Under the pieces are notes generated by a model. The model saw nothing but the letters and a program-made list of their open reading frames with translations. It ran no database searches and was not told the DNA's origin. Shown one piece after another: positions 5,454-34,079 of a stretch of 64,000 bases of DNA (positions within the stretch are counted from its first letter, which is position 1; the number at the start of each line of letters is the position of its first letter). The DNA is from Podarcis vaucheri. Taxonomy: Eukaryota. The stretch is from the NCBI GenBank assembly GCA_965113315.1, contig OZ220374.1; one strand, given 5' to 3'. A program made the translations under genes and the position numbers.

Positions 5454-5599
5454 CAGAGTTGGGGAACCTGTGGCCTTCCACATGTCATTGAATTTCATTC
5501 AGCTCACATCAGCCCTGGCCAATGTGGTCAGTGATAGATAAGGGATGATGAGACTTGCAGTCCAACAGACTGGTGGAAGGTCACAGGTTTCCTACCCTG
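5454..5599. mobile_element. Older palindromic hAT MITE
   Basis: Ends CAGAGTTGGGGAACCTGTGGCCTTCCA ... TGGAAGGTCACAGGTTTCCTACCCTG; TSD TGGTAGAG / TGGTAG(GG), with the right copy split by the next element. Confidence 0.65.
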
Positions 5600-5605
5600 T
5601 GGTAG

Positions 5606-6036
5606 CAGCGGCGTAGCGTGAGTTATCAGCACCCGGGGCAACGCAAGTAATTTGCGCCCCCTAACCCGGGGCAAGGCACGTAATTTGCGCCCCCCCAACC
5701 CCTAACATGCGAGTTGCCGCTGGCGCTGCTGCCCAAACGACGCCGCTTGCCCCGAGGAGGAGGGGGCAGAGAGGCGAGGAAAATGCAACGGCCCAGCAGC
5801 TGCAGCAGCGGCGGCGGAGGCGGGGCTGTGAGGAGGGGCTGCCTGGTGCGTCCTCCGCGGCGAGCGCTGAGAGCCGCTGCCTGCCAGGCGCCTTCAGCCG
5901 GGCGCCGCGAGACATGCGGCTCTGCTACAGCCTGCGCTGGAGGCTCTTCGGCGACTCCGGAGGCAGCGAGCGCGCCCCCCCAGATGTTGCGCCCGGTGCG
6001 GCTGGCACCCCTGGCACCCCCCACGCTACGCCACTG
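5606..6036. mobile_element. Non-autonomous hAT (Tip100-like TIRs) element with CpG-rich internal cargo
   Basis: TIRs CAGCGGCGTAGCGTG / CACGCTACGCCACTG; identical 8-bp TSD TGTGGTAG at 5598-5605 and 6037-6044; duplicated subterminal ACCCGGGGCAA...GTAATTTGCGCCCCC. Confidence 0.9.
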
Positions 6037-8288
6037 TGTGGTAGGGGATGTGGTGGCACAAAGTTGAGTTGTGATGACACCAATGTTTGGACAAAGGGGA
6101 AGCCATGGTTGCAAACTTAGCAGCTTACTCCTTGAGACCTTTCTTGGCAAGCTCAAACTGCAGTGAAACCAGTCCCTTTTGATTTAGAGAATCTTGTTCG
6201 AAGGATCACAACTTCAACACTTGGTGCTTTCAAGCGCATTTTGTAATGCAGAAAAAGATGACTAAAGAAAGGCTCCAACTCTCTTATATAAAGCTAAGAT
6301 AATGCTAAAATAAATGAATGAATGAATAATCCATCTATGTTGAGGAACACATCACTATCAATGAATAAAAAGTCATCTTTCTTTTACCATACTGCATAGA
6401 TCAGTGTACACACAAGAACATCTGATCAACCCTGCAGAAAGCAGTTGCTGCAATGTAAATGAAACGTCAAAACAATCTGAAAAACATCATTAATTAGATA
6501 GTGTTTGTAGATCTCTTTTGGATGAAACATTGTGAGCAAATACTGATTTGTATTCATTTGACCAATTTTCATTCCTGACCATAGATGAACACATAAACCA
6601 CGGCATTTTCTGCTTCTGTTTACAGCTGAATTTCCCGACACCCCTATGTGTCATTAACTTTTTTTCCTCAGCCTGCTCCTCCAATGAGTTTTTTCTATCT
6701 ATCCCAATATTTTGAATGAATAGCATATGTTTGGTCTAACACATCTGAAATTGTTCCTGTGGCAGATAACCAAGATGAGTTAAGACAGAAATATTTTCTT
6801 TCTGAACAGATAAATGGTGGAACTAGTTCATGGAACGTGACATATGACTAGTGATGGCAACAACATTTGAAAAAGACTAATCATTGCCAAGTTACAAGCT
6901 CATCTCTTGGTGTCACTCATGCCTAGCCTTGACCCCACTACCAGACACTGAGTCTTCACAGGAAAACCTGATAGCCTACAGACCAAGGACCCTGGAGAGC
7001 AAACAGGATCCCCTGGAACCAGTGCTGACGATTCTTTTGTGGGATCTTCCTGGGTGATACCCATTGAAGAAGGATTGTGGCTGTTGGAGGAGGAGACAGA
7101 GCCACCTCTCAGCTCTCAAGAATGCCAACACCAAAAGATCCAGGATGAAGAGTGATGAGGTAGTATGCAACTCAACAGTAGGGATGTAAGAAGGCATTGT
7201 TTTCCATTTTGCTCTTCATTTGTCTCATGCAGGACCGTTTCCATTCTGCTGCAGTTCATCTTCCTTAAAATTTTACATAATTTGTCTCAATGTCGTGGAA
7301 TTATATAATTTACATAATTCATTGCATAAGTTATTTCAGTGGAAAGGAAACACAACACAAAGGGTGCGTGCAATCAATCATATATCATTTGCGAACTGAA
7401 AGCAACAAAAGCAGTGAATACTTATCATATTCACTGCATTGATTTCTATTCCAGACACTGGGGACCTGGGCACCCACAAAAAAAATTGTTGAAGATGCTT
7501 GGCACCCGCACCGTGGGGCCTCCGATGCAACTTATGGGGTTCCCAGGCGCTGCTGTGTAACATGTGACGTAAGGTGACATCATGATGTCACCTTACATTG
7601 CACACACCGCTGGGGACCCATAATTTGGGGCCCGAGTTGGCTCCCCTGATTATTCCAGACAGGGGATGTATAAGCAAACACCAGCAGTTTCCGCTCTTGT
7701 TTCAGTCAGAAGTCTCTGACAATGCTCCTCACCACCCGTGGAGGTCTCAGTGAGACTTGGGGTTCGCCACGAGAACAAGCAATAATACCTGAAACAAATT
7801 TAGCACCAGCAGCTGTGACTAGGATGTGGTATAGGAGGCCATAATATAGGTCCCCGACTTCTTGAATCTGAACCTAGCTCCTCTATTTAGATTCTTTTTG
7901 GCATTGACCTTGGATGGTTGCTTGTCCTTGCCTTGGGATTATGTTCTGGACTTGGACTGATGCCCTGTGCTTGACTTGGGTTGTTTTAAACACACCTGTG
8001 CCTTCATCCCAGCTCTCATTGGTGAGTGTTTTGGGTAGGAGGCTCAAACCACCCTGGACTGGAATTCTAGTCCCTGATGGTAGGTAATGGAATATGACAC
8101 CTGAGCCACTTCTGAGCTGATCCAAACTCCAATGAAATTAAGGCCCCCTCAGGAAAAGCTTGCGTATGTCATAATCTCACCACAACAATTATATTCTCTT
8201 GTAGCTGTGGCAACAGGAAGGTCTCAGCTGCATATATAAGCCTTGTAGGCAGAAATGCTGCATTTTAAAATGTTTAAGCCTGGGGGAT

Positions 8289-12597: not shown

Positions 12598-13723
12598 TAA
12601 GGGGATGTGGCTGTTCAAGTGAAAAATGTTCCTCAGCCCTGTTGTAGAAGATGTTTGAGGAGATCTAAAGCCTGCTTTTGTAACTACTGTGGAACTGAAC
12701 ATTGATGATCTTAGCTCAGGTATTTTTATTCCTTTTTTTTAAAGAAAAAAAACTGCACTTCAACCTCTAATTTCCTTTTTATTTTATTTATAGGAGGTTA
12801 CAATATTAACTTTTAATGTGCAGGATCAGAGTCATTAAAGTTCTAATTTAAATTCAATTTTGCAACCTCAGGTTCTTCCCCCATGTTAAAAATATTATAA
12901 TTGCACTGGCAAAAGTATATTCCACTTCAACTGCAGAATCATCCTGCTCCTATTCTGCTTTCCTATAGTGGCCTGCCAACATTATGACACTTGCTTTTTA
13001 GGAATATGCAATGTGATTGTGGCATGGGAGTATGATTATATAAATGCTGTTTTCCCTGGCACTGTTTGAATTCTTACTGAATATAAGCTGAGTCCCAGCC
13101 AACATTGTTGGAGGGACTGTTTATGTCTCTGCGTTGGCTGTCTCTTACTGCACAAGCCTAATTAGTTTAATATATCCACAGTGTGCTGACTTGCTTTATC
13201 TTCTTGGCTTACTTGTTACAAAAAGGAGAGAAATTATCAATGAAGGAGGGAGGAAACCCGCCCCTCTTGTTGCCATTAAAAAATACTTAGCCGGTGGGAA
13301 GCACATTCTGGTCCCATCTGTTGGCAAGAAGAGTAAGGGCCACTGAGAGATTGCACCTGCTTCCTCCCAATGAGACATCATGGCAAGGAGAGAACCATTT
13401 GACTCTAGCTCTTGGTCAAAGAAGCAGCAGCTGCAGGGAGCTTACTTCCCTCCTCCCTGCCATAAAGAATGCTTCCCATTGCCATATGGTTGACCCATGT
13501 TTGAGCAACAATGCTGGACTGGATAGGCTTTTGGTACGATCCCACAGGGATGCTCTTAAGCACTCTGGGACCTTGGACTATTGGTCCATCTGTCGCAGTA
13601 ATGTCAACATTGACTGGCAGCAGCTTTCCAAGATTTCAGACATCTTCCAGCCCCAACTGGAGATGCTAAGGATTGAACATAGAATCATAGAATGATTGGA
13701 TCATAGAGTTGGAAGGGACCTTG

Positions 13724-14003
13724 GAACCAGTGTGGTGTAGTGGTTAAGAGCGGTAGTCATGTAATCTGGGAAACCAGGTTCATGTCTCTGCTCCTCCACA
13801 TGCAGCTGCTGGGTGACCTTGGGCCAGTCACACTTCTGTGAAGTCTCTCAGCCCCACTCACCTCACAGAGTGTTTGTTGTGGGGGAGGAAGGGAAAGGAG
13901 AATGTTAGCCGCTTTGAGACTCCTGAAGAGGAGTGAAAGGCGGGTATCAAATCCAAACTCCTCCTCCTCTTCTTCTTCTTCTTCTTCTTCTTCTTCTTCT
14001 TCT
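13724..14003 (+). mobile_element. tRNA-derived SINE with (CTT)n tail (Squam3-like)
   Basis: CCAGTGTGGTGTAGTGGTTAAGAGC A box; body shared with 36063 and 59804; (CTT)n tail. Confidence 0.85.
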
Positions 14004-14244
14004 GCATGCAAAGCAGATGATCTACCGCTGCGTTACGTCCCTTCCCACTCTCTGCAAAGCGCCCTTTGACCTGGGACGGCTGACTCAAAACGAAGTGTAC
14101 TTTGTCCTCTTGATTAGCCTGTCTACTAAGGCCCTCTAAAACAACACACAGTCTGTTGTGAGGATCACTTTGAAGATCATTCAGCTGAAAGGCAGGCTAG
14201 AATTCAAAATAATAAATTAACTGTGCAGTCCTATATGAATATAT

Positions 14245-14435
14245 GTTGTTTAATCGTTTAGTCGTGTCCGACTCTTCATGACCCCATGGACCAGAGCACG
14301 CCAGGCATTCCTATCTTCCACTGTCTCCCACAGTTTGGTCAGGCTCATGTTTGTAGTTTCGAGAACACTGTCCAACCATCTCATCCTCTGTCGTCCCCTT
14401 CTCCTTGTGCCCTCCATCTTTCCCAACATCAGGGT
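14245..14435 (-). mobile_element. 3' fragment of an RTE/BovB LINE
   Basis: The reverse complement encodes TLMLGKMEGTRRRGRQRMRWLDSV...VHGVMKSRTRLND*; 14-bp TSD CTATATGAATATAT at 14231-14244 and 14436-14449. Confidence 0.9.
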
Positions 14436-14452
14436 CTATATGAATATATAGG

Positions 14453-14881
14453 AGACCATATAACACTGGTCTGAAAGACCTACATTGTCTTCCAGTACCT
14501 TTCCAAACACAATTCAAAGTGTTGGTGCTAACCTTTAAAGCCCTAAACGGCCTCGGCCCAGTATACCTGAAGGAGTATCTCCACCCCCATTGTTCAGCTC
14601 AGACACTGAGGTCCAGCTCTGAGGTACTTCTGGCGGTTCCTTCACTGAGAGAAGTGAGGTTACAGGGAACCAGGCAGAGGGCCTTCTTGGTAGTGGCACC
14701 CGCCCTGTGGAAGGCTCTCCCATGAGATATCAAGGACTTTTCTGACTTTTAGAAGACACCTGAAGGCAGCCCTGTTTAGGGAAGTTTTTAATGTTTGATG
14801 TTTTACTGTGTTTTTAATATTCTGTTGGGAGCCACCCAGAGTGACTGGGGAAACCCAACTGGATGGGTGGGGTATAAATTA

Positions 14882-14930
<49 letters not shown>
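14453..14930 (+). mobile_element. L2-clade LINE 3' fragment
   Basis: VLTFKALNGLGPVYLKE...RAFLVVAPALW; (ATT)n tail. Confidence 0.9.
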
Positions 14931-14931
<1 letters not shown>

Positions 14932-16553
14932 CTGCTGGATCAGGCCACTGGCCCATCTAGTCCAACACTTTGTTATCACAGTGGCAAACCAGACAGCTGT
15001 GGGGAATCCTACAAGCAGGATTTGGGCCCTTGAATACTCTCCCCTCCTGTAGTTTCCAATAACTGGTTTCCAACATGTTTGCTTAGACCTAAGTACCATT
15101 GTTTTCAGTGATGCCTACTCCCAGTTGAATGCTGACAGCGTTGCAGGGGGAATAATTCAAATGTCAATGAAAGATGAAATACTTTATCTCATTTGGAATC
15201 AAGTGATGTTTTTGCCCAATCTGAGCATGCTTTATTTATTTCACCTTTGCGGAGAGATTATTTTGAGTGAGAAATAAACATGCTTGCTCTCTAGGGCTTG
15301 TCATTTTTTTCTATGTTTCTCCTTATTACACTGAGAGCAAGCAATGGAGCCATTTCAAAATTACAACTAAAAATAACAGTATACTATAAACTTCAGGCGG
15401 TTTGTAAAGATTAGATTACGATGATGATTCAGACAGTACCAACTACTATTTCAGCAGAGCTGGGGAAACTAGAAAAAAAAACCTAAGTTGCAATCCTAAA
15501 CTGCTTTCCTGGAAGTAAGTCTTGTTGAACTCAATGAGGTTTATTTCTGAATAGGCATCCATAGGATTGCACTGTTAATGCATTTTCTCTCTAGAGTGAA
15601 ATGCTGCCTCGGCATTAGGAGTATCAATGCAAGCTAGTTGTCATGTGCTGATCAGTATTTCAAATGATGCCTGTTGCTTCAAATTAAACCTATAAGTAAG
15701 GAGCAGCTCACCATGAGAGCTGGGTTACTTTCTCTATGCTGCGACAAAGAACATGCAGAACTCCTCCTTGCTATTCTTCTCACACACCTTCTCCAGAGTG
15801 ACCCTTGGAGCCAATCCTCAGTGGCTGAATCACCTCCTTTCACTCTGATTGGCCTCAGTCAGCACAAAAGGTGAGAAGGCTTCCCTGTGGTTGAAACTCT
15901 TCCCTTTCATGTTGATTGGGCAGCTTGAAGATGCTGGAGACAATGACCTTGCTGGGACTCTGCTACAGAAACACTCAAGGGTCTTTCACCTCCCCATGAC
16001 CCTGGATCATTGTACCTCTTATGTTTTGTCATTGCATCCATCCTCCAAAAGCAATAGGGAGGAGGAGGAGCATCCGTGCTTACAATGTACTTTGGAGAGT
16101 CCCCACGTTTTGCTCCTGGCGAGGAGGGTGGAAAGTCCCTGGGAGCATGCAGAATGCTGTGCGCAGTGCCTTGGATTCTGGTTTACTCCTTTCCAGCATG
16201 TGGGGTACAATTGTATAAATGTCTTGAGGTTGGTGGTATCACACCTGCTCATATTTCTCAACTCTTCATCATCTCAGGACTTGAAGAACAAGTGAGATAT
16301 TGCCCAATGCAAGAGGTATATCATCATATGGATATTGGGTCCCTTAGGTGGAAGATAAAGACATTCAACAACAATTGGAACCTTGCATAGTAAATTCCTA
16401 GAAGCAGAGAAATACAGAAGGCAAATTCTCAACTGAAGGGATCTTGAGGCGGCTTAGTCTCAGAGATACGGTAAATTCCTCAGTTTGTCTTGGAATAGTA
16501 CCTTGCCAATCACAAAGTAGTTGCCAGAAATTGTTGATAGAAATAACTATTTA

Positions 16554-16979
16554 CCGTACTTTTCCATCTATAAGACAGGGGTTTTTAATTTAAAAATTAG
16601 CTTCAAAATTAGCCCTCTTCTTATACATAGGTAGTACAGAGGGGAATTGGGCAATTGGTCTCAGCCGTGAGCAGGAGATTCTCAACAGTGATAGTGCAGG
16701 TGATTGGTGGCTGTGAGAAGGGCTGCAGGCAATTGGCTGCTGCTTTGAGGGTGGCCGTTTTGCGGGTGCGTGTCTTCGGCCAAGCATGCAATTGTCAACA
16801 GTGGGTGAGCGATTTTTGGCTCCCCCCCCCCAAAGAAGCTCAACAACTCTGAGAAATCCAAATCCTCCCCCCAAAAAAGCTAAACAACTTTGGGCCATCC
16901 TCCCATTTTCTTAATTTTGAGTCCCCAAAAATAGGGGGCGACTTATGCATGGGGGTGTCCTACAGACAGAAAACTACGG
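16554..16979. mobile_element. Tc1/mariner-type non-autonomous element
   Basis: TA|CCGTACTTTTCCATCTATAAGAC ... GTCCTACAGACAGAAAACTACGG|TA inverted ends. Confidence 0.75.
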
Positions 16980-18075
16980 TAACCCCCCACAAAGTGATCA
17001 TAAATTTGCATTCCCATTTAGCAACTGATATGGGCATGGGGGTCCTGATCCATGCATAGGACACCTCATTTCCTAGGACAGGTTGTTAAGACTTCAACTT
17101 CCATTAGCTCCAGCCAGCATGGTCAATGGTAAATGATGATAGGAACTAGGTGATAGATTGTCTAACAGCATCTGGAAGACCTCAGGTTCCCCATCTGTGC
17201 ACTTGTAAAAACACATCTCTAAGTGCATTCCTTCAATGTATGCAGAGGCTCTATATGTCTGTCACATAAGTTGGTTGTTTGTGCCCGCCATTTTTGTTGG
17301 ATGTCTATTGTAGGAGACCTGCTGAGTGCTGGAAGTTCCTTACCAACTGCATGATAGAGATAAGCATTGAGTTGAATTAATTAGCTGTTTCGTGTACAGT
17401 GCTTGAAAACATTGAAATAACAATGTTTAATTAATGGGGGAAACAGAACATTGTGGGGGAGTCTCAAATGTACTGATTGTTAAATCTAAAGGAAGAATGC
17501 CATTTACTTTTAGACTTTAAGCAATTATGTGAACCATGAACCAATGCTGGAGTTTCTAGGTTGCTGCTTGCTAACATGTTTTAGATAAACACAAATATCA
17601 GGTGTTGAAGTGATCTGGCAAGTTCTTAGCTTTAACACTGTTAGTGTCAGCTGTTGGGGACAATTAAATAAGGAATCACAAATTATAAATGGAAGTAGAA
17701 TAGGGTAAAAAAAAAATGCCTGTTTATTTTGAAGATCAAGAAAGAGTGAATAAAAGACCCAACTAAAGCTTATTCTAAGTCAATTCATGAAATTATTATT
17801 ATTATTTTTAAGGGCTACAGGCTTGGGGCTTTTCTGATGGCAGGGTGGGGAGGTTTGAACTGAAAACAATAAATGAATTTTGTAACCAGAACAGCATTCT
17901 TGTGATATATCACATTATCTCTGAATATGTTCACCTAGATCATAGAATCATAGAATCAGATGGTCTCCTTCTGTTTGATAGGTGTTGATTTTGTGTGTTT
18001 AAATGTAGAATTCCTTTTTAGAACATAGTAGGTGTGGCTGGCTGAGCTAACCATTCTAACCAAATTGTGTTGGTA

Positions 18076-18314
18076 CAGTGGTACCTCAGGTTACATACGC
18101 TTCAGGTTACATACGCTTCAGGTTACAGACTCCGCTAACCCAGAAATAGTGCTTCAGGTTAAGAACTTTGCTTCAGGATGAGAACAGAAATCGTGCTCTG
18201 GCGTGGCGGCAGCAGGAGGCCCCATTAGCTAAAGTGGTGCTTCAGGTTAAGAACAGTTTCAGGTTAAGTACGGACCTCCGGAACAAATTAAGTACTTAAC
18301 CTGAGGTGCCACTG
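18076..18314. mobile_element. TcMar-Tigger-like MITE
   Basis: TA|CAGTGGTACCTCAGGTTA...TAACCTGAGGTGCCACTG|TA. Confidence 0.9.
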
Positions 18315-18483
18315 TATTTCTAAATCATTAATAAAACTGGCTATCCTGGGAGGGTTCCTTTATTGTTCATTGCAAACAAATTTTTGATGAAATTTACAGT
18401 TTTAATTACACTGGCTTTTATTTCCACCTTCCCAGTGGGATGCTTACTGCAAAGATTCTCCAAACTAGAGCTATGCATAGACT

Positions 18484-18485
<2 letters not shown>

Positions 18486-18534
<49 letters not shown>

Positions 18535-19474
18535 TTTATTTATATCCCGCCCTCCCCAGCTGAAGCCGGGCTCAGGGCGGCTAACGACACTAAAATAGTG
18601 CAACATTATAAAAACATCATAAGAATTAATTAAAATCAAAATTGATGGCAACCATAAACTAAAGTATTGTAAAGATTGCCAAAGGAGGGAGTCAGGCTGT
18701 GCCCTAACCAAAGGCCTGGTGGAACAGCTCTGTCTTGCAGGCCCTGCGGAAAGATGTCAAGTCCTGCAGGGCCCTTGTCTCTTGTGACAGAGCATTCCAC
18801 CAGGTTGGAGCCGCAGCCGAAAAAGCCCTGGCTCTAGTTGAGGCCAGCCTAACCTCTCTGTGGCCTGGGACCTTCAAGATGTTTTTATTTGAGGACCGTA
18901 AGTTCCTCTGTGGGGCATACCAGGAGAGGCGGTCCCGTAGATACGAGGGTCCTAGGCCGTATAGGGCTTTGAAGGTTAAAACCAGCACCTTAAACCTGAT
19001 CCTGTACTCCACCGGGAGCCAGTGCAGGTGGTATAGCACCGGATGAATGTGATCCCGCAGCGAAGACCCCGTAAGGAGTCTCGCTGCGACATTCTGCACC
19101 CGCTGGAGTTTCTGGGTCAGTCTCAAGGGCAGCCCCACGTAGAGCGAGTTACAATAATCCAGTCTGGAGGTGACCGTCGCGTGGATCACAGTGGCTAGGT
19201 CAGGGCGAGAGAGGTAAGGGGCCAACTGCTTAGCTTGGTGGAGATGAAAAAATGCCGCCTTTGTTATAGCTGCAATCTGCGCCTCCATGGAGAGGGAGGT
19301 ATCGAAGATTACACCCAAACTCTTAACGGACGGTGCTGGCACTAATTGCACCCCCACAAGAGATGGGAGTTGCCCCCTCAATCCCATATTGTCCCGTCCC
19401 AGCCAGAGGACCTCTGTCTTCGAAGGATTTAACTTCAACCGGCTCCCACGTAACCATCCAGCCACAGCTTCCAA
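18486..19474 (-). mobile_element. 5'-truncated L2-clade LINE (a second subfamily)
   Basis: ORF 18704..19474 contains LKLNPSKTEVL, SRLDYCNSLYVGLP and LHWLPVEYRIRFK; (AAT)n tail. Confidence 0.95.
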
Positions 19475-21965
19475 GCATCCAAGCTGCCTACGTATGCGAC
19501 TTTAGCATTTTATTTTAATACTTCATCCGCTGAAACAGAGGATCCCTTGTAAGTGACAAGACCTCTGTGCAATTGTGTCTCTTGTGTTTGGTATTATGCT
19601 AGATAGAACCCCCATGAAGTAAGGGAAACATGACAAAGTCCCATTGGAATTAACAAGGTCTAAGTTTACAATTAATCACATTTAAAAGCAAGGGGCAGTT
19701 TGTGCCTCATGTGGGTATCGCAAAGCGGAACAGTTAAAATTTGTAAAAGCATTTTTCATATTAAAAGTGCCGTTGGAATATTCTCATGGTTCATTTGTTT
19801 CTGTGTATGGCTGATCTGCTGTCACCTGTGTTGGCTGGTGTCTATTGGTAGGGCAGGAGGCGGGGAGGCCAATGGTAGGTGGAGCCAGAGTGAATAACAG
19901 GCAGAACCAGCACATTATCATTTTGACCCTGTCTTTCTCTCTGCGAACCTCTACAGAATCGACACTAAGATTAAGGAGGACGGAGCCAGCAGTCAAGGCC
20001 AACTTGTGAGATGGAAGAGTGGTTGAAAGCACATTGAGGTTGGTGGGGCAATGTCATATTCCTTCTAACAGAACAAACTCCACTGTCCATAAAGAAGGAA
20101 TATTTCAGAAAATTAAAGAAGTAAATCTCAACTCAATAAACATGGTCCACCATTCTAGGGGAAAGGGGATGGCTTGAACAATATTTTTTAAAAAATGGGT
20201 TGGTGCACAAATTAGATTCCCATTGGGAGAATGAACCAAGACCTTTTCTGAGCAAAATATCTGCAGTGGAAGAATTACCCCCCCCCCTTTTAAGAGGAAC
20301 TACAGAGAAAAAGAGGGTTAAAAAAATGACACCCACTCACAGACTAGCTCAGTTAAGTGCTAAGCATTGTTATTTTCAGAGACGCTAAAAAGAAATCCAT
20401 TTCTCCCTAGAATTGATTATTTGATCTGTCACTTCCTTGACAAAAGTGACAGGAGATTTAAAAACTATTGATTTCTCTCCTTTTTTATCATCTAAGCATA
20501 ATTAGAAAAGAAAAATGTATGGTGAGGAATTTTTCCATATTTGTGTCTAACTAAAAAAAGGCCGAGGGCTTATTTTACTGCTGCATAAATATCTCATTGG
20601 AGATGGACAAGGTGTTTGAAACACGTCCAACAGCTCTGTATTGTCTACACTGGCAGCAGCTGTCTAGGATTTCAGTTGTGTTAAGTATAATTGGTTTAAT
20701 TCACACAGAAATTGTGAATGCTTGTGTATTGCTGAAAGGGCTTTAACATGGGGATTTCCCATGGGCTATATTAAAGCCAAGAGATGGTCTCTGAACTCCT
20801 TGATAATTAACTATTGTTTTCTGCTAGCTAACACATGAGTGTTTAACCTTAGATCATATGAGAGGTACTGAACTGAAATTTCACCATCTCTGAAGGGTTG
20901 TGGCTGGGGTCATTATTCTCTGACTTGATGAGAGTGAGGACATAAATGAAGCTCTCCATGTAAACAGCTTAAGGCAGGAGAGACAGACCTTTGCTTTTGA
21001 GTCTGTTTGGAGTATTTCATATGGAGTGGCATATTATCTTGTGGAACTGTTTGGATGTATCATTCTGTTTTGTTTTGAAGAAAGTTCTGCATGTTAAGTT
21101 TTGAATAATACCTAATGGGTCTGGGCAATGCTTCATTTCCAGAAGGAGTCAGTTTTCATGTATCCAGTCACTTCAAAATGCACAATATTAATATCTGGTT
21201 GTACCTGGAGATGCCAGGGATTGAACCTGGGGGGCTTCCTGCATGCAAAGCTGTAGCTCTACAGTGAGCTATGGTCCTTAGCCAGCCAGCATTTGTCAAA
21301 ATGCTGTTGAAATGCACTGTAGTGTCGTAACAGCTGAGGAGCCAATTGCCTGTCTTAAAGTACACCAACACCACCTTGTTTGTGGTGCTAGTGACTCACT
21401 GAAAGGCTTTTGCTGATTCTCTCTGATCATTAAAATGCAAGAAGAGCACGAAATTACTATAATTTGAGGCTTAAATGTATGACACTGCACTGACTTTTTT
21501 TGCTTGCCTGTATTTGGGGCTAAAAAGGTTAGATTTCTATAAATAGCACACAATCCAATAATCGGTAGAGTTGTCTGTCTCTGGCTCCTGGGAATCTTCG
21601 GCATTTTCTTTTCTTGATACCAAGCTCAGGAGCTTTAGTTAACAACAATTTGGAAGGAAGAAAATAAATCCTGGATTGATTGCCTGCCACTTTGCATTTC
21701 TTTCTTAAATTTGCCAAGCTTTTGCAGCATTGTCTCATGCCAAAGAATAGCCAGTTCTCTTGGAGAGGGTTTTTGGGTTTTGCATTAAATCATGTGTGTG
21801 TGTTTCATTGTGTTCAAATTATCCTTGCAAATGGCCTTTCCACATGCCCAAGAAAGGGCTCCACAGAGTTTTCCTAGCTTAGAGGTTACAGGTTTGATCC
21901 TAAATGTGCTTATGTAGAAACAAATTCCACTGAAATCATTTGACCTCTGATAGTAAGTGGCCCAA

Positions 21966-22319
21966 GGACGCGGGTGGCACTGTGGGTTAAACCACAGAGC
22001 CTAGGACTTGCCAATCAGAAGGTCGGCAGTTCGAATCCCCGCAACAGGGTGAGCTCCCATTGCTCAGTCCCTGTTCCTGCCAACCTAGCAGTTCGAAAGC
22101 ACGTCAAAGTGCAAGTAGATAAATAGGTACCGCTCCAGTGGGAAGGTAAACGGCGTTTCCGTGTGCTGCTCTGGTTCGCCAGAAGCGGCTTAGTCATGCT
22201 GGCCACATAACCCAGAAGCTGTACACCAGCTCCCTCGGCCAATAAAGCGAGATGAGCGCTGCAACCCCAGAGTCAGTCACGACTGGACCTAATGGTCAGG
22301 GGTCCCTTTACCTTTTCCT
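21966..22319 (+). mobile_element. Full-length Sauria SINE
   Basis: GGACGCGGGTGGC head, GTTCGAATCCC B box and ACCTTT tail; 15-bp TSD TAGTAAGTGGCCCAA at 21951-21965 and 22320-22334. Confidence 0.95.
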
Positions 22320-23980
22320 TAGTAAGTGGCCCAAATGCATGGCTGGCAGGTGTTGGCATATGTGACACCAGAATATGTGCCAGCTGACGAATCTTTGCTG
22401 TCTCTTTCATTAAGGTCTTCATGTCTGGGTTGTTCTGAAACCAGTCACCTCTTTGAATCTGAAAAGAGAATTTGGTAGCTCCCTCCCTTCACACATTCGG
22501 TGACTATGGGAGCTTTCCTACTGGAGCTTATAGCAATTTAGGAAGGCTGTGACTTAGTGGTAGCTCTGCATGCAGAACATCTCAGTTTCAATCTACTGGC
22601 AGTGCTGGTAGACCCTTCGATGAAATTCAGGAGAGCTGCTGCCAGCCAGTGTAGGTAACGCTGAGCAGGATGGCCAACGGTCTGACTTGAAATAAGGCAG
22701 CTCCCCGTGTTCAGGGAGGTGGATTCTTGTGAGGTCCACAGCAGAAGAGGACCAGGCAAACCTCCCTTCCTGCAGTAGTCCAGCTGGCCACCCCTCAGTG
22801 CATTAATTATCATTCTTGTTTAAAAAGAAAAAGAAAAGGAACACTGTCATGATTCCAAGTGATATATCTTGCCTCGTTTGGTCCTGATAGTGCTATACTT
22901 GCTGTTTGAAAATAGTGTGAATTGGTTCTTAGCCTCTGGGTGTTGGTCGAAGGCTCTTAGATGTCCTGTGACAGATGGGACATTCTTCTCTTTCTGCCAG
23001 GACATCTCTATCTCTACTACTGTTTTGCCTTTTGGACAGCTATAAATAAGACTTCTAAGACTCGTGTGGCTAGTGAATAAGTCTCAACGATCTTGAAAGC
23101 AGCCATACAATGAAAAGCAATTAGAGATGACTAATGTGTGTGCATCAGAGATGCTATGCTATAAAGGCTTTACTAAATTGTGGTTTTTCTTCTTAGGCGA
23201 GAACCATTGTGCAGTCTGCAATGAAGAACATTTCCCCCCCTAAGGTTAATTGCTGCACTGGGCAGGGGGCATTATTATTTTGAGTACTGGTGAGGCGTTG
23301 AACCTCCTTTTCTTGGTGTGTTGTGGTGCTGGTGAACACACACACACACACTTTGTGTTAAAGAACACAAAAGCAAGCACAGACAAAGCTCCATGCTGAC
23401 CATTTAATGTAATGTGTAGCAGGGCCCTAACCTCACCTTGAAAAGCAAACCCTCAAAACGAACATTAAGCCGAGCAAACAGGATAAATGGGTGCATGTTA
23501 ATATGCTAATAAACGTACAAGTGAGGTCACTGCCAAATGCACTTTTCTTCCATGATAATTAAAGTCTAAGGGCTGCTGTGCCCCTTTCAGACTTTCAAAT
23601 TCCATCTATAAATGCATATAACAGGAGTCATGTCTGCTGTCCGCACTCTGGACCCCAATGTGTTGATCAGCTTTGTGTACATTTTGTACCTGTGAAGACT
23701 CAATTCAAGCAAGGCCCCTGCTTCCCTTTCTTTTCCTTTGCATGTTGATTTCAGCATCTAGGTTTGATGAGGCGTGTGGCCCTCACCTGTTCTGGACCTA
23801 CCCCAGCTGAGGAATCACACACCTCCCAGAGCTAGCCACCCCCACCCCTCACCTGGCTAGCTACAGAGCTGGGCTGTGGGTTCTTGCCTGTCTCAGCCTC
23901 CTAGAGCAGTGTTTCCCAACCACTGTTCCTCCATCCCTGCACCCGGCCTCTCCCCCTCCGTCCCCGGCGCGGGGGCTGCC

Positions 23981-24078
23981 GGGATCTGTAGTCCCCTCGC
24001 CCTTGGGCTCCGCGCCCGCGCTGGGTGCGCGAACTACGTTTCCCAGCGTGGCCTGGCGGGCTGGGTGTTTTGTTTGAA
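23981..24078 (+). promoter_or_regulatory. Promoter motifs inside the transposon cargo: two ZNF143/ACTACA-type motifs, E2F-like TGGCGGG, CHR-like TTTGAA
   Basis: GGGATCTGTAGTCCC at 23981-23995 (reverse complement GGGACTACAGATCCC); ACTACGTTTCCCAGCGTGGCCTGGCG at 24033-24058; TGGCGGG at 24054-24060; TTTGAA at 24073-24078. Confidence 0.6.
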
Positions 24079-24190
24079 GCGCTCTTCTCCCGACCATGGA
24101 ATGAGCGCAGCAGCGGCGGCCGGGCGGGCAGGGGCTCTTCCGCGCAGACCGTGCAGCCTGCCTGCGCCCCCGCGGAGATCGGGCGGCAGG

Positions 24191-24241
24191 ATGGAGCCCG
24201 GGAATCCCCGCGGAGGCGGAGCGGCAGAGGCTGCCCCCCAG
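24191..24241 (+). pseudogene. Putative captured first coding exon (MEPGNPRGGGAAEAAPQ, phase-0 donor CAG|GTAGGG); source gene not recognised
   Basis: ATG in context GCAGGATGG, an in-frame upstream ATG at 24101 (MSAAAAAGRAG...), donor at 24242, and a second donor CAG|GTGAGG at 24436. Confidence 0.4.
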
Positions 24242-24687
24242 GTAGGGCTGCGTCGGGGGTTTTTTATTTTTGCAATGCTGCATCCGCGCCGGAGGGGACG
24301 CATCGGACCGCGGGGAGACCCCTTGGCGGGCGTGCAAGGCAATGCATGCGTGCAGGCGTTGCATGGAGTGCAGTGCAATGCAATGGCAACGCGGCGCCCT
24401 GCATGCAACTTCCACCGGCGCTCCGGACTTGGCAGGTGAGGGGGGTCCTCAGTGGGCGGCAGAGAGAGCCGGGAGGGTGAAGGGGGCGAAGGGGAGCCGG
24501 GGGGAGCAGCGCTGCTCCCCGAGCCGAGCCCGGGGGGAAACTTCGGCGTCGTTGCGCCGGGTGTTGGAAGCGGAGGCTGGCGGGGGCCCCTCACCTGCAA
24601 AACCTGGTCGCCTCTCATATATTTCGTGCATTGCATTCATCGCCCGCTTTCTCCTCCAAGGAGCTCCCGGGGGCGCGCGTGGTTCTC

Positions 24688-24805
24688 CCTGTGTTATCCT
24701 CGCAACAACAGCCCTGCGAGGTGGGTCAGGCGAGTGGCCCAAGGGAGCACCCAGGGATTGTCCTGGCCAGGTGGGGTGATTTGAACCCTGCTCTCTGCCC
24801 GGTCT
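24688..24805 (-). mobile_element. Old degenerate tRNA-derived SINE fragment inside the hAT cargo
   Basis: ATCCTCGCAACAACAGCCCTGCGAGGTGGG...TGGCCCAAGG...CACCCAG...GATTTGAACCC resembles the antisense body and B-box of squamate CORE/tRNA SINEs. Confidence 0.55.
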
Positions 24806-26208
24806 TCGTCCTCATTTAGCCCCCACATGTGCATGACTGTGCATGACTGAGGTTTTCCCCCCTCGTCTTGGCTATGGTGTGAGTCTGTGCTGTTAATTAA
24901 TGGGGTTCTGCCTTCGGAGAAGATGAGCCAGCCCTCGAGGAGGTGATTATGTAATTTGCTAGCAATTCATGTCCCTCCCGGCGTGACGCTGCGCGCTGAC
25001 GTCACGGGGCTGTAATGGTGGTGTGCCTCAAGATTTTTTTCATGAAACAAGTGTGCCTTTGCCCAAAAAAGGTTGGGAAACACTGTCCTAGAGCATCCCT
25101 TCCAGTGCTCCCTATGCCTCAGAGCCTGCCATGTTCATGGAGACAAGGGCCCTCTGGCACTGGTGATGGGTCCTGCTTCTCTGGTTCCTGTGCACTGACT
25201 CCCATCCCCTCGCCATCCTGCATCACCCTGTAAGTACTTCCTACACCAGCCGCTCTGCTCCCATCCCCAGCTTGCAGCTTGCCCCAGTGTGTCCCAGTCC
25301 TGGCTACACCCCTCTTTAGGATCTTCCTTCCCCCATTGTCCTGCCAGTTCATGACAAACAGACCAATCTTTGATCAGTTTGAGTCAATGGAGCAACAACA
25401 GCAACAGCAAATGGCCTTCCCCAACCTGGTGCCTTCCCACCATCGACTCCCACCATCCCTGATGATTGGCCATGCTAGCTGGGTGCACATTTCAAAGGAC
25501 AGCTACATTTCACTTCGTGTATTTTTTCAGGAAATGCAAATTAGTTAGGTTCACATTAAAATGCAAACCAAACTGAATTTCTGCCCCATTGCTACTTCCA
25601 GCTGAGCCTATGCTTGTACAAACTGTGTGCCCCATTTGCACCCTACAACATTTAGGGCACACATTGCATGGAAAGAGACTACATGGATCCAGCTTGTACC
25701 ATGTATGATCTATTCAAAAATCCTAATGAAGGTTAGAGTCAGGGGCAGCAGCTGCAATCTTGCTCTATCCCCCTAAGCCTGATTTCTGTGTCACGTAGGC
25801 CTTATGTTATGGGTAATCGTCCATATTAATGAACAATGCACAATAATATATATCTTTTATACGTATTTGGCTAGTCCTGTACTTTTAAAAAATGTTTTGA
25901 AGAGTATTTGCTGGACATTGTTGTTCTTAAATGTACTTTTATTTTACGGGAACTCTCTGAACAGTACTAGCCTTTCTGATTTGATTTGTGATATCAATAA
26001 GTTTTTAAGCACAGAGAATGACCTTAGTACATTTGAAGAAAGGTTAGTACATGTTGGAGGGTTAGAAAAGCTATTGCACTCTGTTTTCATTTTTTAGGAT
26101 ATCGGCTTACAAATGGTTGTCCAACAAACCTGCCTTTACTGCACATAAGTAGGCTATAAATAGCCCTCCAACTTAGAACGGTTTCAAAAATGCTATTGAT
26201 TTGTATAG

Positions 26209-26394
26209 AATGGTGATCTCGGTGGGTGCTCCAGTTTGATATATGTCATAGGGTGATCCTTAACCTTGATGAACCCTGCCAAAGAATCAACCAGCAGATG
26301 GGTTGATGCAAGATTATTTGGCAGAGTTCACCAAGGTTAAGGATCACCCTATGACATATCTCAAATTGGGGCAGCCCCCCCTTAGATCACCATT
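26209..26394. repeat. Long inverted repeat (arms of about 80 bp, spacer of about 23 nt)
   Basis: ATATGTCATAGGGTGATCCTTAACCTTG is mirrored by CAAGGTTAAGGATCACCCTATGACATAT; the arms extend to AATGGTGATCT / AGATCACCATT. Confidence 0.9.
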
Positions 26395-27015
26395 TTGGGG
26401 GGATCTATGGCCCATCAGCTGCAGTCTGACAGAAGCACTTTCCCCTGGATCCCTTTAATGGAGTACCCTGATTCCTTCGAGAGGATATCATATGTAATTG
26501 GCTTCCTGATGTCTGGGTCTGGAGGGGTGGTGGTGCCTATGGCAGCCCTCCAGCAGCTTGCATACATGGAAGTAATAACAGGGGTTGGGAAACTGGAGCA
26601 ATTTCCAAAAGAATGTGGTTGCGGCTACATGCAAGGGCATGGTCTTGGCAGCTAACCCCCATTCTTTATGGGACATCTTCCTCCCATTCATGAGAGAGAT
26701 GCGAGCCCACCCCAAACTGTGACCTAAAGGCTTCACAAAAATTCCATGTCCTAGAGTATGCTCGGAATGTGGAAGGAATAACAGGATTGTAATACTCTCT
26801 GCATCACAGTGTGCCTCCAAGTGCTCACAGGATCTCGGGAAAGGGCTCTGGCTGAGCCCCGGGTGCCAGAGCTTGAAAGTGATCATTCTGAAATCAAGGC
26901 CGAGCTTATGCTCTGCTGTCACTGAAACAAAACTGGCTGAAAAGAATATGCTAGCCTGCAAATACTGGAGCGTCAACTGAAACCGAGGCCTGAGTGTGGC
27001 TGGCTTTTACAGCTA
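26300..27015 (-). mobile_element. Degenerate DIRS/Ngaro-type tyrosine-recombinase retrotransposon fragment (RNase H end and recombinase N-terminus)
   Basis: Frameshifted minus-strand peptides occur in the expected order: LTLQYLQASIFFSASFV and FQNDHFQALAPGAQPEPFPE (RNase H C-terminus), then PSTFRAYSRTW and GLAAKTMPLHVAATTFFWKLLQFPNPCYYFHVCKLLEG (recombinase N-terminal domain). Recognised from memory of family motifs. Confidence 0.65.
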
Positions 27016-32229: not shown

Positions 32230-32915
32230 CAGGAGCAGGCGAACAGGACGCCGGCCTAGACGGCTCCAGACGATTCCATCATCTCCAGGTGAGGAGGCTG
32301 CGGCGAGCGCGCGGCGTTTCCTCGCAGCACCTGGCGGAGCAGCAGCAGCAGCAGCAGCAGCAGCGACCATTCGGCGCCTGCCGCCTCCGCCGCCCCGCAG
32401 CCGGCAGCCCCTTACGCGCCGCCCCCGGGAGACCCGGCGGCCACACGGCGCGGGAGACTCCGGGGCCCGCGTCGTCAGCCCTGCTCCGCCGCCTCCGTGT
32501 CCTCGCGAGGGAGCTGGCGGGCGCGCGGGCGCGGGCACACACACACTCTCTCTCGCTGCCCGGAGGGAAAGCGCCTCATAAGGAGCCGAGGCAGCGGGGC
32601 GAGGGGAGGAGAGCTCGCCGCGGCTGGCGGCCAACAGGTAAGGAAGGCAGTGGCGGCTGCGTTTGGGCGCGCCGGGCTGAGCGAGGAGAGGCGCCCGCTT
32701 GGCTGTCCCCCAGCCCGGCTGCCCCCCAGCGAGGGGGAGGCTGCGGCGGGGCGTCCTGCTCCCTGGGCGAGGGCAGCCTGTGGCGCTGCCCCGCACTGGA
32801 GGCTTCCTGCGTCGAGGCGAGCAAGTAGGGCTTGGGGTGCAGATACGTGTATGTATGTATGTGTTTGTTTGTGTGAGAGGGTCCGGGTGCGCGCGCGCTA
32901 TGGGCGCGCGAGACT
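32230..32915 (+). promoter_or_regulatory. DGKB: CpG island: probable DGKB promoter and non-coding first exon, ending at donor CAG|GTAAGG (exon end 32637)
   Basis: Dense CpG/GC sequence not bounded by TIRs or TSDs, a strong splice donor at 32638, (AGC)9, and sense orientation to the DGKB coding exon. The TSS cannot be located from sequence; the link to DGKB is inferred. Confidence 0.75.
32338..32364 (+). repeat. (AGC)9 trinucleotide repeat in the DGKB CpG island
   Basis: Counted directly. Confidence 0.95.
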
Positions 32916-34079
32916 CTGCTGCTGCAAAGCCGGAGCTTGGATGCTTGCTGTGTTTCTGCCTAGTTGGTATTATCTCCTGTCTTCGCCACCCCAAAATCAT
33001 AACCCGTGCTATCCTGTAATTGAAATGCATGCAATATCCTCGGTCTGCATTGCACCTGCAGCAAGTTAGCAAAATCCCTGCCTGGGTGGCTGGATCGATT
33101 GCAGCGTCGGGAGGCTTGGGGGCAGCCTTTATTTATCCCTCTGTTTGTATGCGTGGCTGTTTGTTCGGCTTCTGTTTTTCCCCTTCTTCAGTGTATGCAT
33201 GTAAACATGCCAAGGGAACCTTAGGAAGAAAGTTGTGGCGAGCAGCCTTGATGCTCTTCCATTCATATCTTCCTAACTTCTGCCTTTTTTCCCCCAGCTC
33301 AGTGAGTCTACTCTAAATTTATCTGTGACGTTGGGGTGATGTCATACGTGTCATGTTGGTTTATGCTGGGTTTATATATGCTGCCTTGGTGATACAAGCA
33401 ATTTTTTAAATATAAAAAACGTGTTTTGTCTGCAGACAGAAAGTTCTGCAGTGGCTGGTCACTAGAAACTTTACTTCATTTAAGGTGGCAGATTCTCCCC
33501 ATCCAAATGACTTGGGGAAATGTGATGCTTGCTCGAAGCTATATGGCTGCTGTATACAGTCCTATGCCAAAGCGAGCCTCACTGGGTTCAGTGGAGCTTA
33601 TTCCTAGTGCATAGCACTGGAGTCTAGCATTACAATCTGCACAATTCAACTTTGATTGTACATTTTCCAGAGGACCTAGGCTATTGGGTGACTAAGAAAT
33701 ATATTAAAAAAATGAGAATTGGTCTGCAGCCCTATACATACTAATCTAGGAACATGTATGAACTCATTGGGACTTTCAGTGTGAATCAGAAGTATATCAA
33801 TTTATGGACAATTTGTGTTTTGTGCTAGTAAAAAATAAAAAAATGAAGGGTCCTTATTTAAATTGTTGGTTTCTGAAAGGTGATGCACCTGCTAGGCTTT
33901 CTTTGCACTGTTAAAATTCTGCAATGTTGAATTCTGTTTTGGTTTTTAAGTGTTCTTGCAACACTAAGAAAACAAACAATGGGTTTGAATTCACACTAAT
34001 GCTTTAATCTTGACCGCATTTATCTGAGGGTAAGCCCCACTGAATTCATTTGGTGAGCATGCTTTAGGCTCCACTGTAA

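What the first reader, a model, noticed from the sequence alone, without database searches (positions are those of the whole stretch)
23899..25093. Pack-hAT: a DNA transposon carrying a whole captured gene 5' end (promoter, first exon, start of intron), landed upstream of DGKB
Seen: a 1.18-kb segment bounded by perfect 15-bp TIRs (CAGTGTTTCCCAACC) and a perfect 8-bp TSD (TCCTAGAG), the hAT signature. Only about 23 bp of transposon-like sequence remain at the left end. The interior reads like a vertebrate gene start in natural order: CpG island, ZNF143-type motifs, ATG exon, CAG|GT donors, GC-rich intron, then an old decayed SINE. An old SINE inside a young element is best explained by copying of genomic DNA, and a retained intron argues against retroposition. 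Known: TIR elements that carry host DNA exist (Pack-MULEs in plants, Pack-TIRs in animals). Inference: a lizard hAT family is mobilising a promoter module. I do not know of this family having been described.
Basis: partly seen in the sequence, partly recalled or inferred. Interest (0 to 1): 0.9.

Follow-up and report, generated by a model that had tools for sequence, protein, structure and literature searches.

The report
High-copy lizard hAT transposon, promoter-like core
This is a real cut-and-paste (hAT-type) transposon insertion, but its gene-start-like interior is not a private captured gene: it is the shared core of a transposase-less family present roughly ten thousand times in wall-lizard genomes, and no source gene could be found.

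Summary
The structure is real. Perfect 15-bp inverted ends (23907-23921 / 25071-25085) and a perfect 8-bp target duplication (TCCTAGAG) bound a 1,179-bp element. Its first 720 bp form a CpG island (GC 69%, CpG o/e 0.85).

The interior is not single-locus cargo. Contigs of three lizard species laid on the region give about 10^4 times single-copy depth from end to end of the element in two species. In the third, depth is about 3,000x for the core and 13,000-21,000x for the right end. Depth steps sit at the inverted ends.

This copy sits inside an older repeat and is probably absent at the matching site in the third species. At least nine substitutions separate it from the family majority, seven of them CpG decay, so it looks methylated and silent.

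No source gene emerged: two protein searches on the main + strand frame, Pfam on ten ORFs and solved-structure searches on three found nothing, and there is no codon periodicity. ZNF143-like motifs also occur in an ordinary hAT MITE in this window.

An ancestral host-promoter capture remains plausible but untested. The scan found the same kind of element on other pieces of this genome. Moderate interest: a new member of a known kind.

The parts
23899..23906 (.). Left copy of the 8-bp target-site duplication TCCTAGAG
   Evidence: (D16).
23907..23921 (+). Left terminal inverted repeat CAGTGTTTCCCAACC. It is the only transposon-like sequence at this end.
   Evidence: Summed contig depth rises from about 3e4 to 6e5 between bins 23808-23908 and 23909-24009.
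23922..24640 (+). CpG-island-like core shared by the whole family. It holds two ZNF143-like motifs (about 23977-23992 on the - strand, 24033-24052 on the + strand), a 17-codon ATG mini-ORF at 24191-24241, and donor-like sites at 24242 and about 24436.
   Evidence: - GC 0.69 and CpG o/e 0.85; motifs and donors.
- Summed depth is 6e5-1.4e6 in organisms A and B, against a single-copy depth of about 50-60.
- No protein or Pfam match and no codon periodicity.
- A minority of contigs (8-12 of roughly 50-70 per position) have other sequence before 23928, which indicates a longer variant.
24640..24830 (-). SINE-like segment with a tRNA-derived-SINE-core look. Its identity is not verified.
   Evidence: Its depth matches the rest of the core, so it is part of the family unit. 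It has no other copy in the window. The resemblance to a squamate SINE rests on memory only.
24831..25070 (+). Right subterminal region. The last 70-115 bp (from about 24971 or 25013) are a backbone shared with other subfamilies that have different interiors. A palindromic TGACGTCA lies at about 24999-25006.
   Evidence: In organism G, depth is 5.9e5-9.3e5 here against 1.0-1.6e5 in the core. Loose ends 'before' 24971, 25013 and 25015 show three other interiors joined to the same end. Sequence.
25071..25085 (-). Right terminal inverted repeat (GGTTGGGAAACACTG on the + strand)
   Evidence: Heterogeneous loose ends begin exactly behind 25085 (13 contigs in X10, 143 RNA reads in X23), which means many different insertion sites.
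25086..25093 (.). Right copy of the TSD TCCTAGAG
   Evidence: The organism-G contig (record 13) aligns from exactly 25086, with 23 unaligned letters to its left.
23707..23898 (.). Left part of an older, lower-copy repeat into which the element inserted
   Evidence: Depth is 2.5e3-3.8e4, against about 50 further out. Joints 23905-23908 -> 25106-25160 are paralogous copies without the insertion.
25094..25625 (.). Right part of the same older host repeat(s)
   Evidence: Depth is 3e2-7e4. Sequence.

Best explanation
Window 23907-25085 is one copy of a very abundant, transposase-less hAT family of wall lizards.

**How it moves.** It is mobilised in trans: an autonomous hAT transposase encoded elsewhere recognises the 15-bp ends, cuts the element out, pastes it in and makes an 8-bp target duplication.

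**What the interior is.** The unit has a CpG-island-like core, a SINE-like piece and about 100-230 bp of right-end backbone. This unit is the family's common body, not cargo picked up at this locus. The core was most likely added once to an older hAT backbone, since the same right end occurs with other interiors. That chimeric element then amplified to roughly 10^4 copies in two species and several-fold fewer in a third.

**History of this copy.** It inserted into an older repeat. The site is about 7 kb upstream of an unbounded CpG island and about 38 kb upstream of a DGKB-like first coding exon. The insertion probably came after the split from organism G. Since then the copy has lost CpGs, which suggests germline methylation. 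It therefore behaves as a silenced repeat, not as a working promoter.

**Shown:** the ends, the TSD, the multicopy nature, the family boundaries at the TIRs, the nesting and the CpG-biased decay.

**Inferred:** trans-mobilisation, a single ancestral acquisition of the core, timing, and silence.
For: - **Ends and TSD.** Both are perfect and unique in the window, with 0 such structures in 100 shuffles.
- **Copy number.** laid 10,870, 12,640 and 5,692 contig pieces in X1, X3 and X10. Summed word depth is 6e5-1.4e6 across 23909-25120 in A and B, against 50-60 for unique flanks. In G it is 1.0-1.6e5 for the core and 5.9-9.3e5 for the right end, against 44.
- **Boundaries.** Depth steps coincide with the TIR ends, and flanks behind 25085 are heterogeneous.
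- **Variants.** Other interiors are joined at 24971, 25013 and 25015, and a minority variant has other sequence before 23928.
- **Decay.** Almost all other contigs differ from this copy at nine positions: 23987, 24022, 24062, 24066, 24112, 24152, 24226, 24937 and 25030. Read, seven of these are CpG->TpG/CpA changes in this copy.
- **Nesting.** Paralogous uninterrupted copies of the flanking repeat appear as joints 23905-8 -> 25106-25160.
- **Timing.** Record 13 of X10 has 1 mismatch in 104 and depth 34. It starts exactly at 25086 with 23 unaligned letters, which fits an empty site in organism G.
- **RNA.** Only 610 reads were laid, 567 of them only partly, and 0.9 of them run on into unlike sequence. 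Both strands are covered, and no splice joint is among the listed joints.
- **No coding content.**
Against: - The tool warns that summed contig depth is not a copy number, so 10^4 is an order of magnitude only.
- No other full copy could be fetched and aligned. The family consensus, other TSDs and the share of full-length copies are therefore inferred from short contigs.
- No autonomous partner with these TIRs was seen.
- The tables are truncated (49 differences, 106 joints and 736 loose ends are not shown). The count of substitutions, the empty site in G and the absence of splice joints are all incomplete.
- Silence is judged from one RNA library of another species.
Confidence: 0.85

Rival explanations
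1. Multicopy Pack-hAT. The core was copied once from a host gene's promoter, first exon and start of intron (with a resident SINE) into a hAT backbone, by gap repair or template switching, or by two nearby ends moving the DNA between them. The chimera then amplified. This refines the best explanation and does not contradict it.
For: - The core looks like a gene start in natural order: CpG island, motifs, a Kozak-like ATG, and 2 donor-like sites against 0.2 expected.
- A SINE-like piece inside the unit fits genomic DNA.
- The same right end occurs with other interiors.
- Earlier notes on this genome report hAT elements carrying identifiable pieces of RANBP9, TAL1, CDK5R2 and PKD2 (not checked by me).
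- hAT is the commonest Pack-TIR carrier in animals (PMC8277862).
Against: - No parental locus or source protein was found.
- The proposed exon is only 17 codons, and there is no codon periodicity.
- ZNF143-like motifs also occur in an ordinary hAT MITE here.
- A variant that extends further left is itself multicopy (8-12 contigs), so it is not the single-copy parent.
Confidence: 0.35
2. The core is the transposon's own 5' region. The element is an internal-deletion derivative of an autonomous hAT whose own promoter, 5' UTR, first exon and intron are CpG-rich. On this reading nothing was captured from a host gene.
For: - The promoter-like part starts right behind the left TIR and points inward, as a transposase promoter would.
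- A longer variant exists to the left of 23928, and several other junctions lead into the same right end. Both fit a series of deletion derivatives.
- The classical Ds-del elements of maize arise this way (PMC3260210 abstract).
Against: - Only 15-21 bp of left-end sequence precede the core, and there is no subterminal region mirroring the right end.
- No transposase remnant appears in any frame.
- From general knowledge, CpG islands are not typical of vertebrate hAT 5' regions.
Confidence: 0.2
3. One reading: a young, essentially private Pack-hAT that picked up one gene's 5' end and landed here as a rare event.
For: Perfect TIRs and TSD, and a single copy in the 64-kb window.
Against: The interior is at about 10^4 times single-copy depth in two species and about 3,000 times in a third, with family boundaries at the TIRs. 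This copy also differs from the family majority at nine or more sites.
Confidence: 0.03
4. The core is a mosaic of other repeats, for example pieces of retroelement 5' UTRs, MITEs and a SINE, assembled inside a hAT shell by nested insertions and deletions. It only mimics a gene start.
For: - ACTACA..TCCC motifs are MITE-borne in this genome.
- A SINE-like part is present.
- Internal short repeats of GCAATGCA / TGCATGC type lie at 24329-24410.
- Another element in this window (52258-53853) looks like such a mosaic.
Against: - No part of the core matches anything else in the window.
- No internal TSDs or TIRs were seen.
- High CpG o/e is unusual for old repeats.
Confidence: 0.15

Closest known systems
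Pack-TIRs of animals (Tan et al. 2021, Nat Commun 12:4280, PMC8277862), e.g. Pack-hAT-N8_XT carrying 291 bp of the CAPSL 5' UTR in Xenopus tropicalis
   Same: A hAT-type shell with non-transposon-looking interior from a gene's 5' region. There are multiple copies with different flanks.
   Different: - That definition needs a unique, TE-free parental copy at 90% identity or more, and none is known here.
- Published multicopy animal cases number four families, with the frog examples at three to five copies. This family is at roughly 10^4.
- Only 15-21 bp of TE sequence remain at the left end.
Pack-MULEs of plants
   Same: A TIR transposon shell around GC-rich gene fragments, often 5' ends. About one third are multicopy (as cited in PMC8277862).
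   Different: They belong to a different superfamily (Mutator, 9-bp TSD), and their gene fragments are identifiable. Here the element is hAT-type and no gene has been identified.
Ds1/Ds2-type non-autonomous hAT elements of maize (PMC3260210)
   Same: They share only the short TIRs and little else with the autonomous element. The interior is unrelated, and they are mobilised in trans.
   Different: The maize interiors are short and AT-rich, not CpG-island-like. Copy numbers are far lower.
Other 'Pack-hAT'-like families noted by this scan in the same genome (s1-849511, s1-850194, s1-852778, s1-850575, s1-849501)
   Same: Non-autonomous hAT elements with CpG-rich, gene-start-like cores. Follow-up found them to be shared family interiors with tens to thousands of copies.
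   Different: Several of those carry a recognisable coding fragment (RANBP9, TAL1, PKD2, CDK5R2), and this one carries none. Whether they have the same TIRs is unknown. The two other hAT-like elements in this window have different TIRs.

Membership tests
hAT superfamily, non-autonomous element | 8-bp target-site duplication | tested here: met
   TCCTAGAG on both sides, perfect.
hAT superfamily, non-autonomous element | Short TIRs beginning YARNG (CAG/TAG type) | tested here: met
   CAGTGTTTCCCAACC, 15/15 complementary. The YARNG rule is from general knowledge.
hAT superfamily, non-autonomous element | TSD consensus nTnnnnAn | tested here: inconclusive
   TCCTAGAG has A at position 7 but C at position 2. 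One site cannot test a preference.
hAT superfamily, non-autonomous element | An autonomous hAT (BED/RNase-H/hAT-dimerisation transposase) with matching ends exists in the genome | not testable with these tools
   There is no access to the rest of the assembly. No transposase remnant lies inside the element.
hAT superfamily, non-autonomous element | Many copies at different sites with the same termini | tested here: met
   Depth steps lie at the TIR ends, and flanks behind 25085 are heterogeneous in contigs and RNA reads.
Pack-TIR (sensu Tan et al. 2021) | TE sequence on both sides of a non-TE interior | tested here: met
   TIRs lie at both ends, but the left end has only the 15-bp TIR.
Pack-TIR (sensu Tan et al. 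2021) | A unique parental copy of the interior, 90% identical or more, not flanked by the TE | not testable with these tools
   No genome-wide DNA search of this or related assemblies was available. Proxies were negative: protein searches, Pfam, PDB, and a metagenome scan for the family's right end, tried to fetch other copies. The variant that extends left of 23928 is itself multicopy.
Pack-TIR (sensu Tan et al. 2021) | The interior is not itself a repeat family (top hit unique) | tested here: not met
   The interior is at about 10^4 times single-copy depth in two species and about 3,000 times in a third. It could qualify only as a multicopy Pack-TIR, once a parent is found.
CpG-island promoter / gene 5' end | CpG-island composition (over 200 bp, GC above 0.5, o/e above 0.6) | tested here: met
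   719 bp, GC 0.69, o/e 0.85.
CpG-island promoter / gene 5' end | Transcripts that start inside and splice from the proposed donors | tested here: inconclusive
   One RNA run of organism G gave depth 1-17 over the core on both strands. 90% of the reads are chimeric, and no splice joint is among the listed joints. The tables are truncated and only one tissue and species was sampled.
CpG-island promoter / gene 5' end | Protection from germline methylation (no CpG-biased decay) | tested here: not met
   Seven of the nine near-fixed differences from the family majority are CpG->TpG/CpA changes in this copy. The numbers are small.
SINE fragment inside the element | Match to a known SINE consensus | not testable with these tools
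   No repeat library was available, and there is no other copy in the window.

The most novel reading that the evidence does not exclude
A hAT transposon of wall lizards once copied the promoter, first exon and intron start of a host gene. It then amplified that module to about ten thousand copies. That would be by far the largest gene-fragment-carrying (Pack-type) TIR family known in an animal. It would have seeded the genome with thousands of CpG-island-like, ZNF143-motif-bearing modules, and copy number differs several-fold between closely related species.
Probability: 0.3. Interest if true: 0.7.

Novelty: new member of a known kind. Interest (0 to 1): 0.4.

Why it matters
For this locus alone it matters little. 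It is one decaying copy of an abundant repeat, about 7 kb from the nearest unbounded CpG island, with no sign of activity.

The family is more interesting. In two of the three species sampled, the subfamily with a CpG-island-like core accounts for most copies that carry these ends. Its abundance differs several-fold between close relatives, which points to recent, lineage-specific bursts. In this 64-kb window, three of the four most CpG-rich kilobases lie inside hAT-type elements.

Two consequences follow:
- CpG-island and promoter predictions in lacertid genomes will be contaminated by transposons.
- If a source gene is found, this would be an amplified Pack-type family far beyond published animal cases, which reach at most a few copies (PMC8277862).

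That would make it possible to test whether transposons can spread ready-made promoter modules in a vertebrate.

Tried and rejected
- **Rfam on 22000-27000.** Nothing inside the element, so no snRNA-type gene explains the ZNF143-like motifs. ARAGORN found no tRNA.
- **Self-BLAST.** Neither the element with its flanks nor the SINE-like part nor the host repeat has another copy in the window.
- **Source-gene searches.**
  - The + strand ORF holding the proposed exon (23876-24436) gave 0 hits among proteins of 0.55-1.75x its length.
  - The same ORF gave 0 hits in an exhaustive phmmer of 1.84 billion representatives.
  - Pfam on ten ORFs of both strands found nothing.
  - The PDB sequence search on three ORFs gave only a chance-level hit (SoxX, E 0.09).
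  - A 17-codon exon is too short to be found this way, so these blanks are weak evidence.
  - The - strand ORFs were not sent to the large protein databases.
- **Metagenome scan.** An exact 26-mer of the right end found nothing. A second scan was not spent, because lizard DNA is unlikely in that collection.
- **Literature.** The TIR string occurs in no held paper, and no paper describes this family.
- **Findings index by sequence.** It came back blank.
- **Bacterial promoter and terminator scan.** Irrelevant here.
- **ZNF143 motifs as proof of a host promoter.** Rejected, because a plain hAT MITE at 48518-48651 carries the motif pair.
Full report
**1. Observation**

- TCCTAGAG lies at 23899-23906 and again at 25086-25093.
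- Directly inside these lie CAGTGTTTCCCAACC (23907-23921) and its perfect reverse complement (25071-25085).
- The 15-mer has no other match in the window at up to two mismatches.
- A scan for any perfect inverted repeat of 11 bp or more, within 4 kb and flanked by a perfect 8-bp direct repeat, found only this structure. It found none in 100 composition-preserving shuffles.

The interior 23922-24640 has GC 0.69 and CpG o/e 0.85, against 0.2-0.3 in the flanks and 0.33 for the whole window.
- An ATG at 24191 opens 17 codons that end at CAG|GTAGGG.
- A second donor-like site lies at about 24436. Two AGGTRRG sites on the + strand compare with 0.2 expected (p about 0.016).
- Two ACTAC[A/G]NNTCCC motifs lie at 24033 (+) and 23992 (-).

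Beyond the TIR the two ends share nothing, so the left end has almost no transposon sequence. The SINE-like segment (about 24640-24830) could not be verified. It has no relative in the window and no repeat library was available.

**2. The interior is a family body, not private cargo**

Runs from seven coded organism labels hold half or more of the sampled words of the region. I laid Logan contigs of organism A (X1, evidently the species of the window: 1 difference in 835 bases of unique flank), organism B (X3, about 1% flank divergence) and organism G (X10, about 2%), plus raw RNA reads of G (X23), on 23000-26000 at 90% likeness or more.

| Region | X1 (A) | X3 (B) | X10 (G) |
|---|---|---|---|
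| Contig pieces laid | 10,870 | 12,640 | 5,692 |
| Unique flanks, word depth | 59 | 50-56 | 44 |
| Core, summed depth | 6.0e5-1.05e6 | 6.3e5-1.4e6 | 1.0-1.6e5 |
| Right end (24919-25120), summed depth | 8.7e5-1.1e6 | 9.0e5-1.1e6 | 5.9-9.3e5 |

- Depth rises between bins 23808-23908 and 23909-24009 and falls after 25020-25120, which is at the TIR ends.
- The tool warns that summed depth is not a copy number. Order of magnitude is still the only reasonable reading: about 10^4 copies in A and B, about 3,000 cores in G, and 13,000-21,000 right ends in G.
- Loose ends begin exactly behind 25085 and are heterogeneous (13 contigs in G, 143 RNA reads), as expected for many insertion sites.
- Loose ends 'before' 24971, 25013 and 25015 show three other interiors joined to the same right terminal 70-115 bp. 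That stretch is therefore a backbone shared by several subfamilies.
- A minority of contigs (8-12 of roughly 50-70 per position in A and B) carry other GC-rich sequence before 23928 in place of the TIR. A longer variant therefore exists, and it is itself multicopy.

The subfamily with this core makes up most of the family in A and B but only about a sixth in G. That indicates lineage-specific amplification.

**3. This copy**

*Nesting.* The flanks 23707-23898 and 25094-25625 are themselves repeats, with depth 3e2-7e4. Joints 23905-23908 -> 25106-25160 are diverged paralogous copies of that repeat without the insertion. The hAT copy is therefore nested in an older element.

*Decay.* Nearly all other contigs differ from this copy at nine positions: 23987, 24022, 24062, 24066, 24112, 24152, 24226, 24937 and 25030.
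- Read, seven of the nine are CpG in the family and TpG or CpA here.
- One is a transversion at a CpG, and one goes the other way.
- CpG sites make up about 16% of the element. This bias suggests that the copy has been methylated in the germline. It has not behaved as a protected CpG-island promoter.
- The list is truncated, so nine is a minimum (0.8% or more).

*Timing.* One organism-G contig (record 13, depth 34, 1 mismatch in 104) aligns from exactly 25086 and has 23 further letters that do not align to the TIR. This fits an empty site in G. With about 2% flank divergence between A and G, an insertion after that split is consistent. This is an inference from a single contig.

*Location.* A CpG island at about 32230-32930 is not bounded by inverted repeats. 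An ORF at about 63400-63468 (+) reads [23 protein letters not shown], which I recognise from memory as a DGKB-type N-terminus. 'Upstream of DGKB' is therefore plausible: about 7 kb from that island and about 38 kb from the first coding exon.

**4. Is the core a captured gene start?**

The following were all negative.
- The reading frame holding the proposed exon has no relative among proteins of similar length.
- It has none among 1.84 billion representatives read exhaustively.
- Ten ORFs of both strands have no Pfam domain.
- Three ORFs have no relative in the PDB.
- GC content shows no three-base periodicity.

A 17-codon exon is too short for these searches, so the blanks are weak evidence. 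They do mean that nothing ties the core to a gene.

The ZNF143-type motifs are not diagnostic. A palindromic hAT MITE at 48518-48651 (57-bp arms, 93% complementary, TSD ATCTTAAC) carries the same motif in both arms, and first-reader notes report the same for MITE families elsewhere in this genome.

RNA of organism G gives depth 1-17 over the core on both strands. Of 610 reads, 567 lie only partly on the stretch and 0.9 run on into unlike sequence. That is read-through from other copies. No splice joint at the proposed donors is among the listed joints, though the tables are truncated.

**5. Mechanism**

*Shown:* a TIR/TSD-bounded unit that exists in very many copies with these termini.

*Inferred from what is established for hAT elements:* an autonomous hAT transposase encoded elsewhere binds the ends, excises the unit and integrates it with an 8-bp staggered cut. 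Only 15-21 bp at the left end appear to suffice.

The same right end occurs with several interiors, and the core looks unlike transposon sequence. I therefore think a single ancestral acquisition of GC-rich DNA by a hAT backbone, followed by amplification, is the most likely history. Three origins for the acquired DNA remain open:
- a host gene 5' end (Pack-type capture, by gap repair with template switching or by two nearby ends moving the DNA between them), about 0.35;
- the autonomous element's own 5' region, about 0.2;
- a mosaic of other repeats, about 0.15.

**6. Comparison with what is known**

Pack-TIRs in animals (PMC8277862) require TE ends on both sides and a unique, TE-free parental copy.
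- hAT is the commonest carrier (208 of 370).
- Only four families are multicopy, with the frog examples at three to five copies. One of them carries a 291-bp 5' UTR piece.

This element meets the first criterion. It fails the 'interior is unique' criterion, and the parental-copy test could not be run. I therefore do not file it as a Pack-TIR. It works like a non-autonomous hAT of the Ds1 kind (short TIRs, unrelated interior) at MITE-like copy number.

The TIR string is in no held paper, and I found no description of the family. hAT elements make up 2.3% of another lacertid genome (PMC9498476).

**7. Earlier notes of this scan**

The scan has found the same kind of thing on other pieces of this genome.
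- Follow-ups on s1-849511 and s1-850194 also concluded that CpG-rich cores are shared interiors of families with hundreds to thousands of copies, with no proven source gene.
- Others (s1-852778, s1-850575, s1-849501, s1-849503) report recognisable fragments of RANBP9, TAL1, PKD2 and CDK5R2.
- I did not check those claims. They raise the prior that hAT elements of this lizard do pick up gene 5' ends, but they do not show it for this element.
- Whether any of them has the same TIRs is unknown. The two other hAT-like elements in this window have different ends and share no sequence with this one.

**8. Verdict**

The element is a new member of a known kind: a high-copy, non-autonomous hAT family with a promoter-like core. 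The specific claim of a captured whole gene 5' end at this locus is not supported, and an ancestral capture remains open.

Interest is 0.4. It would be about 0.7 if a source gene is found, because a Pack-type family of about 10^4 copies would be without precedent in animals.

Noticed in passing
window 5598-6044: A second hAT-type element. Its TIRs are CAGCGGCGTAGCGTG / CAGTGGCGTAGCGTG (14 of 15) at 5606-5620 and 6022-6036, with a perfect 8-bp TSD TGTGGTAG. The interior is CpG-rich with an internal ATG. Its ends differ from the studied element and it shares no sequence with it.
   Followed up: partly
window 52258-53853: A third hAT-type element. Its TIRs are CAGGGGTCTGCAACC / CGGGGGTCGGCAACC, with an 8-bp TSD TCTTAGCC. 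The interior has a tandem duplication (about 52350-52560), AT-rich parts, and a CpG-rich block at 53460-53800. Together with the other two elements, three of the four most CpG-rich kilobases of this window lie inside hAT-type elements.
   Followed up: partly
window 48518-48651: A palindromic hAT MITE with 57-bp arms (93% complementary) and TSD ATCTTAAC. Both arms carry a ZNF143-like motif (ACAACAACTCCCATCATCCC in one, ACTACAATTCCCATCATCCC in the other). Such motifs are therefore transposon-borne in this genome.
   Followed up: yes
window 26243-26357: A perfect-looking palindromic MITE (ATATGTCATAGGGTGATCCTTAACC...). It scores against several plant miRNA-precursor families in Rfam, far below their gathering scores. 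This is a hairpin artefact, not a miRNA call.
   Followed up: partly
window 32230-32930 and 63400-63468: A CpG island that is not bounded by inverted repeats. It has a (CAG)n run and a donor-like CAG|GTAAGG at about 32637. It is likely the real promoter and non-coding first exon of the downstream gene. An ORF at about 63400-63468 (+) reads [23 protein letters not shown], DGKB-like from memory.
   Followed up: partly
window 24919-25120 (family level): In organism G the right-end backbone is about six times commoner than the CpG-rich core. In organisms A and B the two are about equal. The core-bearing subfamily therefore expanded several-fold more in the A/B lineage.
   Followed up: partly
window 23707-23898 and 25094-25625: The insertion site lies inside an older repeat with hundreds to about a thousand times single-copy depth. 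Part of it (25410-25490) resembles the decayed arm of a lizard MITE (ccccaacctggtgcc...ggccatgctagctggg).
   Followed up: no
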